From the sequence record MN988561.1: a stretch of DNA of 64,000 bases, one strand, 5' to 3'. How positions within the stretch are numbered: the stretch's first letter is position 1; each line of letters begins with the position of its first letter. Shown here piece by piece: positions 1 to 3,288 of the stretch. The notes under the pieces were generated by a model. It did no database searches and was not told the DNA's origin. It was given only the letters and a program-made list of their open reading frames with translations. A program made the translations under genes and the position numbers.

Positions 1-186
1 GGAAGCTGGGAAGTTCCTGATGGTGAAGACGATGATGGAGACTACGACTTTGAAGTCTTGACATCTAAATCGTCTAAGTCACTTCAGAACATTGTTGAGC
101 CTATCATTAAGAAATATCCAAGTCTAGATATCTACTATCAAACTGGAGAGAAGAATTATATTACTGTTCATGCTACTGTAAAGTAG
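1..186 (+). CDS. C-terminal part of a hypothetical protein running in from upstream
   Basis: Frame 1 is open from base 1 (GSWEVPDGEDDDGDYDF...VHATVK) to TAG at 184-186, just before the tRNA. Confidence 0.6.
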   Translation, partial: GSWEVPDGEDDDGDYDFEVLTSKSSKSLQNIVEPIIKKYPSLDIYYQTGEKNYITVHATVK

Positions 187-196
187 TTGACAGTAT

Positions 197-281
197 GTCG
201 GTATGGCGGAATTGGTAGACGCCCTGGTTTTAGGTACCAGTGTCGAAAGACGTGTAGGTTCGAGTCCTATTACCGACACCA
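197..281 (+). tRNA. trnL: tRNA-Leu(UAG), class II, CCA encoded
   Basis: GTCGGTA/TACCGAC acceptor, D-loop GAATTGGTAGAC, CTGGT-TT TAG GT-ACCAG anticodon arm, long variable arm, GTAGG-TTCGAGT-CCTAT T-arm, ACCA end. Confidence 0.95.
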
Positions 282-287
282 AATTAT

Positions 288-422
288 GACTTGATGTTGC
301 GAAAGAAATGGTTACTTCGTATTCCAAACGAGAAATGTAGGTATCGAATCCTGCTATCCTAATAGGATATCGTCTAAGATAGGACGCTAAAATTTCCATT
401 TCTGACACTATCTCATCAAGTC
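288..422 (+). ncRNA. Y RNA/YrlA-like unit 1 with permuted tRNA module
   Basis: Outer stem GACTTGATG/CATCAAGTC, TTGCGA...ATCT loop, inner stem AGAAATGG/CCATTTCT; cargo is T-arm GTAGG-TATCGAAT-CCTGC, then TATCCTA/TAGGATA acceptor, then D-arm GTCTAAGATAGGAC. Confidence 0.8.
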
Positions 423-430
423 TCATATTC

Positions 431-513
431 AGATCTTGACGTTGCGACTAGTATCGGATACTTCGCTTTGGTTGCTAAAAACTCCGATGCAATATACTAT
501 CTCGTCAAGATCT
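431..513 (+). ncRNA. Y RNA-like unit 2, minimal (no tRNA module)
   Basis: AGATCTTGACG/CGTCAAGATCT outer stem, TTGCGA...ATCT loop, GTATCGGA/TCCGATGC inner stem, TACTTCG motif, short apical loop. Confidence 0.75.
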
Positions 514-523
514 TTCAGTTTAT

Positions 524-668
524 CCTAACGTTGCGAATTAAACAGTTACTTCGATATCAAGCAGAAGGTCAATGGTTCGAATCCATTCATGCGACACGCG
601 TTGCATGTAGCTCAGTTGGTTAGAGCGTCCGCCACCACAAGATCTGTTTAAGTCATTATCTCGTTAGG
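524..668 (+). ncRNA. Y RNA/YrlA-like unit 3 with permuted tRNA module
   Basis: CCTAACG/CGTTAGG and TTAAACAG/CTGTTTAA stems; AATGG-TTCGAAT-CCATT T-arm precedes CATGCGA/TTGCATG acceptor and GCTC-AGTTGGTTA-GAGC D-arm. Confidence 0.85.
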
Positions 669-677
669 TCCTTATAA

Positions 678-822
678 CCTAGTGTTGCGATCGGTACAAC
701 TTCATCGCATTGTAAGCCCTGTGTCATTGGTTCAAATCCAATTCCTCCGTCCATCTATCGGAGGATAGCTCAGTCTGGTAGAGCAAGGAAAGTATGTTGT
801 ATCAATATACCATCTCACTAGG
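678..822 (+). ncRNA. Y RNA/YrlA-like unit 4 with permuted tRNA (Thr-UGU-like)
   Basis: CCTAGTG/CACTAGG and GGTACAAC/GTTGTATC stems; ATTGG-TTCAAAT-CCAAT T-arm; TCCTCCG-TCCA-TCTAT-CGGAGGA acceptor; GCTC-AGTCTGGTA-GAGC D-arm. Confidence 0.85.
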
Positions 823-828
823 ATCCTT

Positions 829-960
829 ATCTCATCCACCAACCTCGGTGTAAGAGTGGAAAGAGTTACGTGATCGTATGAGAATACGATCACAGTCATT
901 TAGGTCATGTACCATGTGTACAAGGATCATTCGAAGGTGCTCGTCATCTTCAGCAAATAA
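829..960 (+). other. Structured spacer that does not follow the array scaffold
   Basis: GTGATCGTAT-GAGA-ATACGATCAC perfect 10-bp GNRA hairpin, plus TCCAC/GTGGA and TGTAC/GTACA stems; no GTTGCGA. Confidence 0.4.
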
Positions 961-1104
961 TGTAGAGTTGCGAATATATCAAGTTCATCGCTTACCATAT
1001 ACCAAGCGGGTAGCTCAGTGGTTAGAGCACTAGGATGTAACAGTCGTAGAGGTCGTCGGTTCGAATCCGACTCTAACTTCTTGATATAGACTTATCTCTC
1101 TACA
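961..1104 (+). ncRNA. Y RNA-like unit 5, tRNA module opened within the acceptor stem
   Basis: TGTAGAG/CTCTACA and TATATCAAG/CTTGATATA stems; CGCTT-ACCA-linker-AAGCGGG, then D-arm, distorted anticodon arm and GTCGG-TTCGAAT-CCGAC T-arm. Confidence 0.8.
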
Positions 1105-1113
1105 ACTTTTATA

Positions 1114-1248
1114 TGTACTGTTGCGACTAATACGGTTACTTCGTTGCAAATGAAACATAGGTTCGAATCCTATCCAGAGGATTGTCGTAAGATGACATCT
1201 GGCTGAGCATTGGTGAGCTCATCTCCGTATTAACTACATCTCAGTACA
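1114..1248 (+). ncRNA. Y RNA/YrlA-like unit 6 with permuted tRNA (Cys-GCA-like)
   Basis: TGTACTG/CAGTACA and TAATACGG/CCGTATTA stems; TTGCAAA loop; ATAGG-TTCGAAT-CCTAT T-arm; CCAGA/TCTGG acceptor; GAGC-ATTGGTGA-GCTC D-arm. Confidence 0.85.
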
Positions 1249-1258
1249 ATTACAATTC

Positions 1259-1415
1259 GTACCGTTGCGAATGATATGAATACATCGCTGTAGAACCGAC
1301 GTCGTAAGACATGCTAGTTCAAGTCTAGCTCTCCGTCCCAATACTATGACGGAGATGGTGAAATTGGTAGACACATCGGTAGATAAATCTTCATATCGGC
1401 TTACAATCTCGGTAT
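1259..1415 (+). ncRNA. Y RNA/YrlA-like unit 7 with permuted class II tRNA (Leu/Tyr-like)
   Basis: GTACCG/CGGTAT and GATATGAA/TTCATATC stems; variable arm CGTCGTAAGACAT; GCTAG-TTCAAGT-CTAGC T-arm; TCTCCGT-CCCA...ACGGAGA acceptor; GTGAAATTGGTAGACAC D-arm. Confidence 0.85.
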
Positions 1416-1424
1416 ATCTTAGAC

Positions 1425-1449
1425 GCTATGTTGCGATAGTCCTCATAGC
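1425..1449 (+). promoter_or_regulatory. Minimal TTGCGA hairpin in the Ro60 leader (candidate autoregulatory site)
   Basis: GCTATG-TTGCGA-TAGTCCT-CATAGC lies about 8 nt before the AGGGA SD-like sequence and 20 nt before the ATG at 1470. Confidence 0.5.
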
Positions 1450-1469
1450 ATTATCATAGGGAAAATGTC

Positions 1470-3038
1470 ATGGCTTCGATCAATAATAAGTCAGTTGCTA
1501 ATCTTGCACGTACGGTTGCTCCTAAGGCAGTTGTAGCACCTCGTACATTCACTGGTTTATCTCATAACATTCGTAACAATAATGGTGCGATGGCGTATGA
1601 TATCACTCCTATCGAGCAATTGAGACGTACTGTTCTCTCTTGCATGCTCTGGGAGGATTCTGCATATGAGTCTGGTGAACAGATTGCTAATCGTATTGAA
1701 AGATTGATCGGAGAGTGTGATCCCTCTGATGTAGCACATCTTGCTCGTGAAGCAAGACATATCATGAAGCTACGTCATGTTCCTCTCTTTATGTGCATCA
1801 CGATGCTGAAGTATCCCGAACATAAGAAATATGTTCGTAAGACACTCGCATCAGTTATTGAGCGTCCTGATGAGCTTGGTCAAGCTCTCGCTCTCTACTG
1901 GAAGGATGCTCTTTCTCCTGCTCGTACTACTGAAGATACTGAAATCGGACCTCGAGTTACTTACGTTTCTCAGAGAAAGTCTGATCTGAATCTTCCTCTC
2001 CAACTACGTAGAGGTCTTGAAGATGCTCTACAGAAGTTTGACTCTTATCAGTTGAAGAAGTACCTTATGAAGGACAAGCCTGTCTCTATGGCTGACATTC
2101 TTCGTATCGTCCACCCTAAGGGTAAGACTGATGAGATCAAAGCTACCTATGGCGAAATCGTCAAGGGTACTGCTACTGCACCTGATACATGGGAGTCTCG
2201 TCTCTCATCTTCTGGTAGATCTGAGAAAGCTACAATCTTCACAGATATGCTCGAACGTAACAAATTAGGTGCAATGGCTCTACTGAAGAATCTGCGTGGT
2301 ATGACTGAGGCTGGTGTTGATACCAATCTTATTAATACTGCGATTCAGAAGATGAATACTGAACGTGTTCTTCCTTTCAGATTCCTCACAGCTGCTCGTC
2401 ATGCTCCTCAGTTCAAGTCTAGTCTCGGTGAGGCTATGCTAAAATCTCTGAAGGACATTCAGAATCTGCCTGGTCATACAGTACTACTGATTGACATCTC
2501 AGGTAGTATGGGTGGACGTATTTCAGGTAAGTCTGATCTGAGACGTATTGATGCTGCAGCTGCTATTGCTATCATGTTGAAGGAAATTTGTCAGTCTTCT
2601 GATATGTTTGTCTTCAATTATGGTACGTATCAAGTACGTAACGATAACGTCTTCTGCGTGAATCAACCTACTGCTAACAATCACGGATACTCCAGGATTG
2701 TTGAGAGTACGAGGATCTACAATTACGAAGAAGATGCTGTAGTGAAGAGAGGATTTGATCTATCAGATCTTATCGTCAATTCAGTAGTTGGTGGAACTGA
2801 TCTCCAGCAAGCTGTCAGTTACATCAATAATACTGTAGAGTATGATCGTATGATTATCTTTACAGATGACGAATCATCTACTGTTCCGCCAGCTCCTAGA
2901 GGTCTTTCCTATTCGATCAATGTATCGACTGGAAACTATGGAGTGACGTACGGTGATTATGTCCACATCAACGGATTCTCTGAAGGTGTGATCGGCTATG
3001 TCACTGAGTACGACAAGTACGTGAAGAGTCAGAATTAA
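1470..3038 (+). CDS. rsr: TROVE-domain RNA-binding protein (Ro60/Rsr ortholog) with C-terminal vWA domain
   Basis: EQLRRTVLSCMLWED, TWESRLS, LGAMALLKNLRGM, VLPFRF TROVE motifs; MIDAS DISGS...GGTD...FTDDE. Confidence 0.93.
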   Translation: MASINNKSVANLARTVAPKAVVAPRTFTGLSHNIRNNNGAMAYDITPIEQLRRTVLSCMLWEDSAYESGEQIANRIERLIGECDPSDVAHLAREARHIMKLRHVPLFMCITMLKYPEHKKYVRKTLASVIERPDELGQALALYWKDALSPARTTEDTEIGPRVTYVSQRKSDLNLPLQLRRGLEDALQKFDSYQLKKYLMKDKPVSMADILRIVHPKGKTDEIKATYGEIVKGTATAPDTWESRLSSSGRSEKATIFTDMLERNKLGAMALLKNLRGMTEAGVDTNLINTAIQKMNTERVLPFRFLTAARHAPQFKSSLGEAMLKSLKDIQNLPGHTVLLIDISGSMGGRISGKSDLRRIDAAAAIAIMLKEICQSSDMFVFNYGTYQVRNDNVFCVNQPTANNHGYSRIVESTRIYNYEEDAVVKRGFDLSDLIVNSVVGGTDLQQAVSYINNTVEYDRMIIFTDDESSTVPPAPRGLSYSINVSTGNYGVTYGDYVHINGFSEGVIGYVTEYDKYVKSQN

Positions 3039-3045
3039 GTAGTGA

Positions 3046-3073
3046 GAATTGGGAGTGAAATACCTCCCAATTC
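3046..3073 (+). terminator. Hairpin after the TROVE gene (terminator or processing site)
   Basis: GAATTGGGAG/CTCCCAATTC 10-bp stem followed by CATTTAT. Confidence 0.55.
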
Positions 3074-3086
3074 CATTTATCTAAAT

Positions 3087-3170
3087 GCCCACTTGATGGA
3101 ATTGGTAGACATAAGGCACTTAAAATGCCTAGCTTAATGCGTACCGGTTCGAGTCCGGTAGTGGGTACCA
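3087..3170 (+). tRNA. trnL: tRNA-Leu(UAA), CCA encoded
   Basis: GCCCACT/AGTGGGT acceptor, AGGCA-CT TAA AA-TGCCT anticodon arm, long variable arm, ACCGG-TTCGAGT-CCGGT T-arm, ACCA. Confidence 0.95.
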
Positions 3171-3288
3171 TCAAACTCAACCCCAAAATCACCTAGCCAA
3201 ACTCATTATAAATCATAGGCTTCATGAAGAGACCGATGTATCAGATAAGCTGACAAGCTATCTTGATTTCGTAGAAGGGATTCTCAAC

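What the first reader, a model, noticed from the sequence alone, without database searches (positions are those of the whole stretch)
316..1385. Each cargo is a different circularly permuted tRNA, some keeping NCCA and the anticodon loop
Seen: in units 1, 3, 4, 6 and 7 the 3' half (anticodon-loop remnant, variable region, T-arm, acceptor 3' strand) comes before the 5' half (acceptor 5' strand, D-arm), and the acceptor stems pair across a linker. Units 4 and 7 still read T-CCA and C-CCA at the old 3' end. Anticodon-like loops remain: ATTCCAA (u1), ATTGTAA (u4, Thr-like), TTGCAAA (u6, Cys-like), CTGTAGA (u7). Known: canonical YrlA keeps the D/T elbow but replaces the anticodon arm. Inference: the units arose independently from distinct tRNA genes (circularised or tandem precursors). 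They may act as a decoy panel for anticodon nucleases (PrrC/RloC, VapC, PARIS-type defences) or recruit different tRNA-binding enzymes to Ro60.
Basis: partly seen in the sequence, partly recalled or inferred. Interest (0 to 1): 0.88.

Follow-up and report, generated by a model that had tools for sequence, protein, structure and literature searches.

The report
Phage Y RNAs built as permuted tRNAs
Upstream of a Rhizobium phage's Ro60 gene lie seven small Y RNA genes, five of which carry a tRNA look-alike with its two halves in swapped order; this build is already known for bacterial YrlA RNAs, but here some copies keep an encoded CCA end and an anticodon-like loop, and that loop proves to be a widespread, fast-changing feature of the family.

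Summary
The window is Rhizobium phage RHph_TM40 (100% identity). Between tRNA-Leu(tag) and a Ro60/TROVE gene lie seven Y-RNA-like units. In u1, u3, u4, u6 and u7 the order is T arm, closed acceptor hairpin, D arm. A covariance model built only from this phage's own tRNAs, permuted in silico, hits u3 (E 1e-17), u4 (2e-15), u7 (1e-6) and u6 (7e-4). u1 is weak, and nothing else in the 64 kb scores. ARAGORN calls re-joined u3, u4 and u7 as tRNAs, and mismatched halves give none. u4 and u7 carry N73-CCA exactly after a 7-bp acceptor stem.

Published work already describes YrlA RNAs as resembling circularly permuted tRNAs and proposes an origin from dimeric tRNAs.

What appears new is this. In u1 and u6 the heptamer is the loop of a closed hairpin. 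The same hairpin occurs in 102 viral and 123 bacterial/archaeal (genome-collection) relatives, with U33 and R37 nearly invariant. Its triplet varies widely and switches between close relatives. The decoy role is untested. I rate this a new variant of a known kind.

The parts
197..281 (+). tRNA-Leu(tag), the last gene of the phage's 19-tRNA cluster upstream of the array; it encodes CCA
   Evidence: ARAGORN; Rfam tRNA 53.7 bits; annotation of MN988522
288..422 (+). Unit u1, a closed-hairpin ('type B') Y RNA. Anticodon-like hairpin 316-332 (loop ATTCCAA 321-327), T arm 337-354 (8-nt loop), acceptor hairpin 355-369 (6 bp), D arm 371-386, then the conserved CTAAAA 387-392
   Evidence: R1 gives only 8.6 bits. 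The layout matches the family found
431..513 (+). Unit u2, a minimal Y RNA with scaffold only and no tRNA-like module (YrlB-like)
524..668 (+). Unit u3, an 'open' (type A) permuted tRNA. Heptamer 554-560, AC 3' strand 561-565, V loop AGGTC 566-570, T arm 571-587, acceptor 588-594/601-607 (7-8 bp, no CCA), D arm 610-626, AC 5' strand 628-632
   Evidence: R1 58 bits, E 1.3e-17. Rfam YrlA 36.2 bits, full length. ARAGORN call on the re-joined halves. 80% identity to tRNA-Arg(TCT). Compensatory T-stem change in Y65
678..822 (+). Unit u4, an open permuted tRNA. Heptamer ATTGTAA 709-715, T arm 726-742, acceptor 3' strand 743-749, T73-CCA 750-753, linker 754-758, acceptor 5' strand 759-765, D arm 768-784
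   Evidence: R1 51.8 bits, E 1.7e-15. Rfam YrlA 37.3 bits. ARAGORN. Coordinates
961..1104 (+). Unit u5, a third topology. The tRNA-like part (1004-1079) is in natural order (D arm, irregular AC-like arm, AGGTC, T arm). An acceptor-like hairpin CGCTT-loop-AAGCG lies upstream, and the Y stem enters between the T arm and the acceptor
   Evidence: Rfam tRNA 33.9 bits over model positions 6-65; fold; compensatory changes in the AC-like stem in Y65
1114..1248 (+). Unit u6, a closed-hairpin variant. Hairpin 1140-1154 (loop TTGCAAA 1144-1150), T arm 1157-1173, acceptor 5 bp (1174-1178/1198-1202) with a 19-nt inserted hairpin, D arm 1204-1221
   Evidence: R1 18 bits, E 7e-4
1259..1415 (+). Unit u7, an open permuted class II (Leu-like) tRNA. 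Heptamer CTGTAGA 1288-1294, AC 3' strand 1295-1299, long variable arm 1300-1312, T arm 1313-1329, acceptor 3' strand 1330-1336, C73-CCA 1337-1340, linker 1341-1348, acceptor 5' strand 1349-1355, D arm 1358-1374, AC 5' strand 1376-1380
   Evidence: R1 26 bits, E 1.3e-6. ARAGORN. 80% identity to tRNA-Leu(TAG). Best in-phage match is Leu_tag at 0.68. Compensatory D-stem and variable-arm changes in Y65
1425..1449 (+). Eighth TTGCGA motif, inside a 6-bp hairpin (GCTATG...CATAGC) about 20 nt before the Ro60 start codon. It is a possible Ro60 binding site in the rsr leader
   Evidence: read from the sequence. The MFE fold of 1418-1472 did not return this hairpin
1470..3038 (+). Phage Ro60 (TROVE + vWA) gene, the presumed protein partner of the units
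   Evidence: Pfam TROVE 2.8e-13; PDB 9KOP/9L5Y, Thermus phage phiLo Ro60, 1.7e-12; annotated as a TROVE protein
3087..3170 (+). tRNA-Leu(taa), closing the locus

Best explanation
The region is an array of seven YrlA-class Y RNA genes belonging to the phage's Ro60 gene.

Shown:
- Each unit has the same two-helix scaffold around a conserved UUGCGA / YAUCU internal loop, followed by the family motif UUAC(U/A)UCG.
- Five units carry a tRNA mimic in the YrlA order (T arm, closed acceptor, D arm). One carries it in natural order, and one has none.
- The mimics are under structural selection, because compensatory changes separate near-identical phages.

Inferred:
- The array is transcribed together with the flanking tRNAs and rsr, and is cut out by host tRNA-processing nucleases.
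- The scaffold loads each RNA onto the Ro60 ring.
- The tRNA-shaped module is what a tRNA-binding partner sees.
- u4 and u7, and probably u3, have a 7-bp acceptor stem. As shown for M. smegmatis YrlA, they would be opened by RNase P and trimmed to a CCA end, which here is encoded. The result would be two-piece RNAs with a real tRNA acceptor end.
- The heptamer is an anticodon-loop mimic, closed in u1 and u6 and in the homologous position in u3, u4 and u7. Its triplet sets which anticodon-reading host factor engages the RNP.

On this reading the phage makes a panel of Ro60 RNPs that pass for different tRNAs. I think the most likely partners are tRNA-directed nucleases, or repair or modification enzymes acting during infection. 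The data do not say which.

The confidence of 0.6 is for the statement as a whole. By step: Ro60-associated Y RNAs about 0.9, RNase P and CCA processing of u4 and u7 about 0.5, the triplet as a specificity determinant about 0.4-0.5.
For: Identity and context:
- 100% match to RHph_TM40. The array is unannotated and lies inside a cluster of 20 tRNAs next to a TROVE gene.
- The Ro60 assignment rests.

Scaffold:
-.

tRNA mimicry:
-.

Structural selection:
- Differences from Y65 cluster in the cargos of u3, u5 and u7: 17, 8 and 25 differences, with 0-3 variable columns in each of the other four units and about 1.3% Y65-specific divergence across rsr.
- These differences include compensatory pairs in the T stem, D stem, variable arm and AC-like stem.

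Family level:
- The same permuted units occur in arrays of 2-5 upstream of Ro60 in the Xanthomonas, Caulobacter and Brevundimonas phages checked and in the IMG/VR contigs; the weak crAss001 hits lie downstream of its gene.
- 101 of 113 IMG/VR loci with the hairpin motif hold a Ro60 homologue. The motif is always on the same strand as that gene.

Hairpin signature:
- Viral set: fifth stem pair intact in 102/102, U33 in 101/102, R37 in 101/102, 26 different triplets. Every NNU triplet has A37 and every NNG triplet has G37.
- Bacterial set: the same pattern in 123 instances.
- 19 further units have 13 different stem sequences and the same loop rule.
- The triplet switches in 4 of 10 clusters of close relatives, while positions 33 and 38 never change.

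Published experiments:
- YrlA folds like tRNA (10.1101/312249).
- A phage Ro60 binds upstream Y-like RNAs and forms a complex with host PNPase (PMC12135203).
Against: - There are no expression, processing or binding data for this phage.
- The units score far below the Rfam YrlA gathering threshold (36-37 bits against 69), and only u3 and u4 are hit at all.
- u1 and u6 are poor tRNA mimics by the covariance model (8.6 and 18 bits). u1 has an 8-nt T loop and an atypical D loop.
- In u3, u4 and u7 the heptamer is not closed by a stem. In open-type units of other phages that segment is only 3-8 nt long, so there it may be an accident.
- Encoded NCCA is a minority trait in the family (7 of 94), so it cannot be generally required.
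- Published work places the hairpin as a variable arm. Topologically, a five-helix junction fits a class II tRNA equally well. Which helix stacks as the anticodon arm is unknown.
- The family instances are homologous, so the conservation counts are not independent events.
Confidence: 0.6

Rival explanations
1. One reading: a decoy panel. The tRNA-shaped modules, with their different anticodon-like loops, soak up or misdirect host anticodon nucleases (PrrC/RloC, VapC-type toxins, PARIS or retron effectors). This would protect real tRNAs, with Ro60 stabilising the decoys or handing the cut pieces to an exonuclease.
For: - The loop keeps the features such enzymes read: a 7-nt loop, U33, R37 and the 36/37 rule.
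- The triplet switches between close relatives 3-6 times faster per site than the flanks change.
- Cargo substitutions are concentrated between phages that are otherwise about 99% identical.
- The locus sits inside a phage tRNA cluster, here and in 55 of 113 IMG/VR loci.
Against: - The hairpin and its varied triplets are just as common next to chromosomal Ro60 genes of free-living bacteria (Bradyrhizobium, Streptomyces, Acidobacteriota and others). A counter-defence decoy makes little sense there.
- No nuclease gene or target is identified.
- The commonest triplets (GUU, UGU, GCU) are not an obvious list of nuclease targets (my own knowledge).
- Most units have a closed acceptor stem.
Confidence: 0.2
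2. Ordinary paralogous YrlA genes, with differences that carry no meaning. The units bind Ro60 and only the D/T elbow matters. The CCA, the heptamers and the class II arm are drift, or leftovers of gene conversion with neighbouring tRNA genes.
For: - Wang et al. argue that the conserved elbow is the interaction site and that the AS, AC and V regions vary freely.
- NCCA occurs in only 7 of 94 relatives.
- Open-type units elsewhere have 3-8 nt in place of the heptamer.
- The triplets match nearby tRNAs no better than chance.
Against: - Near-invariant U33, R37 and A38 with a free triplet, the 36/37 coupling kept through recent switches, and covarying stems are signs of selection on the loop.
- CCA at the exact position is about 5 times enriched across the family (P 7e-4) and is present in 2 of 3 units here.
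- Compensatory changes occur within the fast-evolving cargos.
Confidence: 0.25
3. True permuted tRNA genes, as in the red alga Cyanidioschyzon. The units would be processed, with the acceptor opened and the ends joined or held by the stem, into chargeable tRNAs that add decoding capacity (for example Phe, His or Asp, which the phage's set lacks).
For: - Re-joined u3, u4 and u7 pass ARAGORN.
- u4 and u7 encode CCA.
- The phage's 20 tRNAs lack Phe, His and Asp, while the u4 body is Phe-like and the Y65 allele of u7 reads GUG.
Against: - There is no bulge-helix-bulge motif.
- No RNA ligase appears in the annotated parts of the genome that I read, though about 75 kb was not read.
- Bodies and triplets disagree: the Leu-like body of u7 carries GUA or GUG.
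- AC stems are imperfect (3/5 in u4).
- The long Ro60-binding stem would remain attached.
- The conserved scaffold and the Ro60 linkage point to a Y RNA role.
Confidence: 0.06
4. Decayed tandem tRNA genes (pseudogenes) with no function of their own.
For: Tandem tRNA genes do score with the permuted model (Microcystis phage L009).
Against: - Seven units share a non-tRNA scaffold with perfect helices.
- Acceptor strands pair 7/7 within a unit.
- The array is conserved in 8 phage isolates with compensatory changes.
- There is family-wide linkage to Ro60.
Confidence: 0.02

Closest known systems
YrlA (Rfam RF02553), the tRNA-like Y RNA of Salmonella, M. smegmatis and over 250 bacteria and phages (Chen et al. 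2014; Wang et al. 2018)
   Same: - It is encoded next to and on the same strand as Ro60.
- It has a 5' GCGA-type Ro60 motif and a conserved YUAY (here UUAC).
- The order is T arm, closed acceptor stem-loop, D arm.
- It is described in print as resembling a circularly permuted tRNA, with a proposed origin from dimeric tRNA.
- M. smegmatis YrlA, with a 7-bp acceptor stem, is cut by RNase P and receives CCA.
   Different: - There are seven units in tandem, with three different break points (31|32, 26|27 and 65|66).
- The CCA is encoded in two units.
- One unit has a class II (Leu-like) body.
- Scores are half the Rfam threshold.
- The T and D stem sequences are not the conserved YrlA ones in u1, u6 and u7.
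- The stem-loop published as 'V' is shown here to carry an anticodon-loop signature, whereas the papers state that YrlA lacks an anticodon loop.
Circularly permuted tRNA genes of Cyanidioschyzon merolae and some other algae and archaea (Soma et al. 2007, as cited)
   Same: The gene order is 3' half, linker, 5' half. The acceptor stem is initially closed by the linker. The anticodon stem is formed by the two ends of the transcript.
   Different: Those transcripts are processed through a circular intermediate into working tRNAs by the splicing endonuclease. Here there is no such motif, and the ends continue into a long Ro60-binding stem.
Deinococcus radiodurans Yrn1
   Same: For u5 only: the T and D elements are in natural order with an anticodon-arm-like stem-loop between them, whose loop is not 7 nt.
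   Different: u5 has a full D arm and a canonical AGGTC variable loop. Binding to PNPase is unknown.
Yrl1 and Yrl2 of Thermus phage phiLo, with phage Ro60 (PMC12135203)
   Same: They are phage-encoded Y-like RNAs upstream of a phage Ro60, with a CGAA-type motif in a bulged stem. The Ro60 protein is homologous (E 1.7e-12).
   Different: There are only two RNAs, and they are not described as tRNA-like. In vitro they form complexes with host PNPase.
Two-piece (permuted) tmRNA of alphaproteobacteria, and viral tRNA-like structures
   Same: They are tRNA mimics with rearranged connectivity and a CCA end that tRNA enzymes recognise (my own knowledge).
   Different: They are unrelated in sequence, have no Ro60 link and have known translation-related roles.

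Membership tests
YrlA-class Y RNA | Encoded within about 4 kb of a Ro60/TROVE gene, on the same strand | tested here: met
   The units lie at 288-1415 and Ro60 at 1470-3038, all on the + strand.
YrlA-class Y RNA | The 5' and 3' ends pair into a stem carrying the GNCGAAN0-1G Ro60 motif near the 5' end | tested here: inconclusive
   All seven units have UUGCGA in an internal loop between two perfect helices. GCGAA occurs in u1, u3, u5 and u7. The first G of the published motif is U, and u2, u4 and u6 read GCGAC or GCGAU.
YrlA-class Y RNA | Order T stem-loop, acceptor-like stem-loop, D stem-loop, with tRNA-type T and D loops | tested here: met
   Met for u3, u4 and u7, and more weakly for u6 and u1 (R1 model; Rfam alignments). 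Not met for u2 (no module) or u5 (natural order).
YrlA-class Y RNA | Conserved YUAY preceding the V region | tested here: met
   UUAC in u1, u3 and u6; AUAC in u2 and u7. u4 and u5 have CUUCAUCG and GUUCAUCG instead. The same motif occurs in other Ro60 phages.
YrlA-class Y RNA | Score at or above the Rfam RF02553 gathering threshold (69 bits) | tested here: not met
   u3 scores 36.2 bits and u4 37.3 bits; the other units are not reported. Phage relatives also fall below the threshold at 30-56 bits.
YrlA-class Y RNA | Bound by Ro60; modified by TruB and DusA | not testable with these tools
   This needs immunoprecipitation and modification mapping.
tRNA (functional gene) | Cloverleaf in natural 5'-to-3' order, detected by tRNA finders | tested here: not met
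   ARAGORN finds no tRNA at 283-1440 in native order. Only u5 gives a partial RF00005 hit, over model positions 6-65.
Circularly permuted tRNA gene (algal or archaeal type) | Re-joined halves form a canonical tRNA | tested here: met
   Met for u3, u4 and u7 with ARAGORN at default settings. The mismatched-half controls are 0 of 6.
Circularly permuted tRNA gene (algal or archaeal type) | The termini form a bulge-helix-bulge motif that is processed into a mature, chargeable tRNA | tested here: not met
   The termini continue into the roughly 20-bp Y stem with the UUGCGA loop. No bulge-helix-bulge motif is seen in the folds. Charging cannot be tested here.

The most novel reading that the evidence does not exclude
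The stem-loop that the YrlA literature files as a 'variable arm' is in fact a selected anticodon stem-loop mimic. Its stem and its U33, R37 and A38 are constant, and it obeys the tRNA 36/37 rule. Its triplet is a rapidly switching specificity code. Phage arrays such as this one, with seven units, three connectivities and some units with an encoded CCA, would then be panels of Ro60 particles that impersonate particular isoacceptors towards anticodon-reading enzymes such as nucleases, modification enzymes or synthetases. That would give the long-sought partner of the YrlA tRNA-like domain a readable address.
Probability: 0.3. Interest if true: 0.85.

Novelty: new variant of a known kind. Interest (0 to 1): 0.6.

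Why it matters
The purpose of the tRNA-like half of bacterial Y RNAs has been open since 2014.

This locus and its relatives show that the mimicry goes further than described. It includes an encoded CCA at the exact tRNA position. It includes an anticodon-type loop whose triplet changes between close relatives while the surrounding loop stays fixed. And it includes several 'identities' side by side in one phage.

That gives a concrete handle. One can change the triplet, or compare units, and ask which tRNA-binding protein follows.

u4 and u7 also look like near-intact products of a head-to-tail tRNA dimer, which is direct sequence support for the published origin model.

On the practical side, these RNAs are unannotated in the Rhizobium phage records. 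In other phages they are often mis-called as short tRNA genes.

Tried and rejected
1. Isotype from the triplet. The heptamers read Gly, Thr, Cys and Tyr, and 5-6 of 7 triplets equal anticodons of the phage's own tRNAs. With a fixed rule this gives P of about 0.03. The bodies do not match the tRNAs with the same anticodon. Across 55 IMG/VR loci the loop triplet matches a nearby tRNA no more often than in shuffled loci (15 against 14.3, P 0.46). I rejected it as evidence of copying from the phage's own tRNAs.

2. Closer relatives of the phage Ro60 in IMG/VR, searched with the single protein, gave none. The only covariation data for this array therefore come from Y65, TM30 and TM39.

3. A first MAFFT alignment of 15 permuted tRNAs was misaligned at loops of variable length. 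I replaced it with a gap-clean set of 9.

4. A promoter and terminator scan showed nothing above the shuffled background inside the array.

5. I looked for RNA repair genes in the genome annotation. None is annotated in the roughly 130 kb that I read; the rest was not read.

6. A diversity-generating retroelement as the cause of the clustered substitutions: the changes are not adenine-specific, so I rejected it.

7. Three review papers that might already describe the anticodon-like loop (PMC10870794, PMC6047535, PMC6542706) are not held. Prior description therefore cannot be excluded.
Full report
WHERE THE WINDOW COMES FROM. Window 150-3200 is 100% identical to Rhizobium phage RHph_TM40 (MN988522) and four sister isolates. 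It is 99.3% identical to TM30, 98.8% to TM39 and 96.7% to Y65, all in the genus Cuauhnahuacvirus, family Kleczkowskaviridae, with genomes of about 207 kb. The records annotate only two tRNA-Leu genes and a 'TROVE domain-containing protein' here; the 1.2 kb between them is blank. The ORF at 1470-3038 is a Ro60 homologue. It matches Pfam TROVE at 2.8e-13, with weaker sub-threshold matches to vWA-type domains, and the solved Ro60 of Thermus phage phiLo (9KOP/9L5Y) at 1.7e-12. Upstream, the phage carries 19 tRNA genes ending with tRNA-Leu(tag) at window 197-281, and tRNA-Leu(taa) follows Ro60. All 20 tRNAs encode CCA, and some neighbours are only 1-3 nt apart.

THE UNITS. Seven units share a 5' GTTGCGA motif, a second motif T(T)AC(T/A)TCG and a 3' (C/T)ATCTC motif. 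In every unit the bases outside GTTGCGA/ATCTC form a perfect 6-11 bp helix. The bases between GTTGCGA and TTACTTCG form a perfect 8-9 bp helix with a partner before ATCTC. The helix sequences are unrelated between units. That is the anatomy of a Y RNA: a long stem made by the two ends, with a conserved internal loop carrying a GCGA(A) motif like the published GNCGAA Ro60 motif. The units span u1 288-422, u2 431-513, u3 524-668, u4 678-822, u5 961-1104, u6 1114-1248 and u7 1259-1415. I found no promoter-like or terminator-like excess inside the array, so a common precursor with the tRNAs and rsr is likely. This is an inference, by analogy with M. smegmatis.

CHECKING THE OBSERVATION: ORDER OF THE HALVES. 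In u1, u3, u4, u6 and u7 the minimum-energy folds show a T arm, a hairpin and then a D arm. I tested tRNA-likeness without relying on my own parsing. I took nine class I tRNAs of this same phage and permuted them in silico, in the order anticodon-stem 3' strand, V loop, T arm, acceptor 3' strand, N73CCA, acceptor 5' strand, D arm, anticodon-stem 5' strand. I aligned them without internal gaps, apart from one gap column in the D loop, and built covariance model R1.

Searched over the whole 64-kb window on both strands, R1 gave the following:

| Unit | Bits | E-value | Note |
|---|---|---|---|
| u3 | 58 | 1.3e-17 | full length |
| u4 | 51.8 | 1.7e-15 | full length |
| u7 | 26 | 1.3e-6 | class II body |
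| u6 | 18 | 7e-4 | |
| u5 | partial | - | natural order |
| u1 | 8.6 | - | filters off only |

Outside the array and the T arms of the two flanking tRNA-Leu genes, no match reached E below 0.3.

CHECKING THE OBSERVATION: RE-JOINED HALVES. ARAGORN finds no tRNA in the native array. On the re-joined halves it calls u3, u4 and u7 at default settings, u1 at a relaxed threshold, and u6 only at -ps80. All six mismatched half-combinations give nothing. The Y65 alleles of u3 and u7, which carry 17-25 substitutions, are still called. So the permutation is real and strong for u3, u4 and u7, and graded for u6 and u1.

CCA. In u4 the T arm (726-742) is followed by TCCTCCG, T, CCA, TCTAT, CGGAGGA, TA and the D arm. 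In u7 the sequence runs TCTCCGT, C, CCA, ATACTATG, ACGGAGA, TG and the D arm. The CCA is therefore at positions 74-76 after a perfect 7-bp acceptor stem and a discriminator base. Two such cases among the three units with a 7-bp stem have P = 7e-4.

THE HEPTAMERS.

- In u1 and u6 the scaffold motif itself supplies the 5' strand of a closed hairpin: TTCGT-ATTCCAA-ACGAG and TTCG-TTGCAAA-TGAA. The V region and T arm follow. The tRNA look-alike is therefore complete, and the Y stem enters between the D arm and this hairpin (break at 26|27).
- In u3, u4 and u7 the heptamer sits in the same linear position: scaffold motif, 7 nt, 5 nt, V, T arm. The 5 nt that follow pair with 5 nt after the D arm (u3 4/5, u4 3/5, u7 5/5). 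This is the published YrlA arrangement (break at 31|32).

u5 is a third case. Its D arm, irregular arm, AGGTC and T arm are in natural order (RF00005 33.9 bits). An acceptor-like hairpin lies upstream, and the Y stem enters at 65|66. u2 has no module.

WHAT IS ALREADY KNOWN. The Rfam YrlA consensus structure itself runs V, T arm, hairpin, D arm, closed by a 4-bp stem. u3 and u4 are sub-threshold hits to it, at 36-37 bits against a threshold of 69. Chen et al. 2014 (PMC4201824) defined the T, AS, D and 'V' stem-loops, the GNCGAA motif and a conserved YUAY that begins V. They found YrlA next to Ro60 in 254 bacteria and 22 phages. They also showed that M. smegmatis YrlA, with a 7-bp acceptor stem, is cleaved by RNase P and receives CCA in vivo. 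Wang et al. 2018 (10.1101/312249) solved the Salmonella domain. [quoted passage not shown] The headline of the finding is therefore the family's known build, and the 'tandem precursor' inference is already published.

ARE THE CARGOS DIFFERENT tRNAs? Re-joined units are 0.48-0.64 identical to each other. That is the range seen between unrelated isotypes among the phage's own tRNAs (mean 0.57, 95th percentile 0.65). blastn searches against 50,697 phage records gave these best matches:

| Unit | Best real tRNA | Identity | Detail |
|---|---|---|---|
| u3 | Acinetobacter phage tRNA-Arg(TCT) | 80% over 70 nt | one alignment across the junction; anticodon stems TCCGC/GCAGA vs TCCGC/GCGGA |
| u7 | Pseudomonas phage tRNA-Leu(TAG) | 80% over 64 nt | loop CTGTAGA vs CTTAGAA, TAG kept with a 1-nt shift |
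| u4 | Staphylococcus phage tRNA-Phe | 84% over 59 nt | V loop plus T arm identical at 22/22; loop region ATTGTAAGC vs ATTGAAGC; also tRNA-Lys at 73% |

For u7 the best match inside the phage is the neighbouring tRNA-Leu(tag), at 0.68. Three different tRNA lineages, including one of class II, are thus supported for u3, u4 and u7. u1 and u6 cannot be assigned. Because the scaffolds are paralogous, the simplest history is duplication of units with later replacement or conversion of the cargo by tRNA-gene sequence. N73-CCA plus a 5-8 nt linker is what the junction of two head-to-tail copies of a CCA-encoding tRNA gene would leave. This history is an inference.

SELECTION. Between the window and Y65 the variable columns pile up in the cargos of u3, u5 and u7 (17, 8 and 25 differences). 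The other four units have 0-3 variable columns each, and rsr shows about 1.3% Y65-specific divergence. The changes include compensatory pairs:

- u3 T stem: AATGG/CCATT becomes GCTGG/CCAGT.
- u5 arm: CTA/TAG becomes CCA/TGG.
- u7 D stem: GTG/CAC becomes GGG/CCC.
- u7 variable-arm hairpin is rewritten from GTC-GTAA-GAC to GCA-TA-TGC.

The structures are therefore maintained while the sequences turn over quickly. The u7 heptamer changes from CTGTAGA to CTGTGGA.

THE WIDER FAMILY: ARRAYS. R1 also finds several permuted units upstream of Ro60 in other phages: Xanthomonas phage 10KY502B (3 units), Caulobacter phage CcrColossus (5) and Brevundimonas phage Bambus (2). crAss001 gives weak hits downstream of its gene. 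All carry (T)TACTTCG or TTCTTCG just 5' of the module. Some are annotated in GenBank as 68-nt 'tRNA-Thr' or 'tRNA-Gln'. Several are class II or Leu-like, and several keep N73-CCA (CcrColossus unit 2 and Bambus unit 2).

THE WIDER FAMILY: THE HAIRPIN. An exact-pattern scan of IMG/VR for the closed-hairpin form (CTTCG, N9, CGRGAGGTC, NNN, GGTTCRA; my rough estimate of the chance expectation is below 1) returned 113 stretches containing 102 unique instances.

- 101 of the 113 stretches hold a Ro60 homologue. The motif is always on that gene's strand and lies upstream of it in 78 of 102 cases.
- The unconstrained fifth stem pair is a standard pair in 102/102 instances.
- Loop position 33 is U in 101/102, position 37 is a purine in 101/102, position 38 is A in 95/102, and position 32 is never G.
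- Positions 34-36 take 26 different triplets. GUU, UGU, GCU and UGG are the most frequent.
- Every triplet ending in U has A37, and every triplet ending in G has G37, which are the usual pairings in real tRNAs. Many loops match loops I recall from real tRNAs (my own knowledge): CUGUUAA, CUUGUAA, CUGCUAA, CUGAUAA, CUUCUAA, CUUUUAA.
- Nineteen further units in the same loci have 13 other stem sequences and the same loop rule.
- Among 10 clusters of close relatives (flank divergence of 10% or less), 4 show triplet switches: CUG/UAG, GUU/GAG, GUU/UCU and GUU/GUG. Position 37 changes along with position 36. Per-site difference is 0.14-0.29 at positions 34-36 against 0.05 in the flanks. Positions 33 and 38 never change.

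The same pattern is at least as common in bacterial genomes. There U33 occurs in 117/123, R37 in 114/123, and there are 37 triplets. This hairpin, preceded by UUAC, is evidently the 'V' stem-loop of Chen et al. In the papers I could read it is treated as a variable arm, and the anticodon-type signature is not mentioned.

THE WIDER FAMILY: CCA. Many IMG/VR loci hold arrays of 2-5 units about 150-170 nt apart, with different loops, and some units have N73-CCA plus a spacer of about 5 nt. Across the closed-hairpin set, CCA sits exactly after the 7-nt acceptor 3' strand in 7 of 94 instances, against 1.5 expected (P 7e-4).

WHAT THIS MEANS FOR THE FINDING.

- u1 matches the closed-hairpin layout, including CGAG after the loop and CTAAAA after the D arm, but it has a degenerate elbow.
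- u6 is a variant of the same form.
- u3, u4 and u7 are open-type units that look 'young'. They are full tRNA bodies at 73-84% identity to real tRNAs, with a 7-bp acceptor stem, and two of them have an encoded CCA.
- In open-type units of other phages the segment in the heptamer position is 3-8 nt long. The heptamers of u3, u4 and u7 are therefore best read as leftovers of the parental loop (the Leu TAG in u7), not as a proven functional loop.

MECHANISM. Shown: the Ro60 linkage, the scaffold, the tRNA mimicry, structural selection, and the loop signature with its switching triplet. Taken from published experiments on relatives: Ro60 binding, recognition by TruB, DusA, RNase P and the CCA enzyme, and complexes of a phage Ro60 and Y-like RNA with PNPase. 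Inferred: each unit loads onto the phage Ro60 and presents a tRNA-shaped module. u4, u7 and probably u3 are opened by RNase P and end in CCA. The loop triplet, together with class I or class II body features, decides which anticodon- or identity-reading host protein engages.

My confidence by step is as follows:

| Step | Confidence |
|---|---|
| These are Ro60-associated Y RNAs | about 0.9 |
| u4 and u7 are processed by RNase P to a CCA end | about 0.5 |
| The triplet is a specificity determinant | about 0.4-0.5 |

The low value for the decoy idea reflects that the same hairpin, with equally varied triplets, sits next to chromosomal Ro60 genes of free-living bacteria.

VERDICT. Its core, a permuted tRNA in a Y RNA, is the known YrlA design, and the origin model is published. 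New here are the size and heterogeneity of the array (seven units, three connectivities, a class II body), the encoded N73-CCA, and the anticodon-type loop. The follow-up shows that the loop is a conserved, fast-switching feature across phage and bacterial relatives. I rate it a new variant of a known kind, with interest 0.6.

Noticed in passing
window 3096-3138 (inside tRNA-Leu(taa), 3087-3170): The window's allele differs from TM30, TM39 and Y65 at 16 clustered positions in the D stem, anticodon stem and variable arm. The changes look largely compensatory. The acceptor stem, T arm and anticodon loop are identical. A genuine phage tRNA therefore shows the same patchy, structure-preserving turnover as the Y RNA cargos.
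   Followed up: partly
window 1425-1449: An eighth TTGCGA motif lies in a 6-bp hairpin (GCTATG-TTGCGATAGTCCT-CATAGC) about 20 nt upstream of the Ro60 ATG. It looks like a minimal Ro60 site in the rsr leader and could allow autoregulation. The MFE fold of 1418-1472 did not return this hairpin.
   Followed up: no
window 826-960: A 135-nt gap between u4 and u5 begins with a second copy of the 3' motif (CTTATCTC). It holds a perfect 10-bp hairpin (GTGATCGTAT-GAGA-ATACGATCAC) and two more stems (MFE -37 kcal/mol). It has no TTGCGA, and it differs from Y65 at 9 positions. It may be a degenerate unit or another small RNA.
   Followed up: partly
L005 2316-2383 (Xanthomonas phage 10KY502B); L007 1643-1710 (CcrColossus); IMG/VR loci L016-L128: Ro60-linked Y RNA units are annotated in GenBank as 68-nt tRNA-Thr and tRNA-Gln. 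ARAGORN made 50 calls overlapping or adjacent to such units in the IMG/VR loci. tRNA counts for Ro60-carrying phages are therefore probably inflated.
   Followed up: partly
L004 18458-18547 (RHph_TM40 record 128457-128546): The phage encodes a tRNA-Ser with anticodon ACT (A34), which is unusual for bacteria. The phage's 20-tRNA set lacks Asp, His and Phe.
   Followed up: no
IMG/VR loci L016-L128: Ro60 and Y RNA loci are very often embedded in phage tRNA clusters. 55 of the 113 stretches hold separate tRNA genes, 455 in all. This suggests co-expression and shared processing with tRNAs.
   Followed up: partly
L140 and L150 (genome contigs): The closed-hairpin pattern also hits contigs labelled as archaeal MAGs (DHVE2 group, Methanophagales). 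I did not check whether these are viral or contaminant contigs, or whether a Ro60 gene is adjacent.
   Followed up: no
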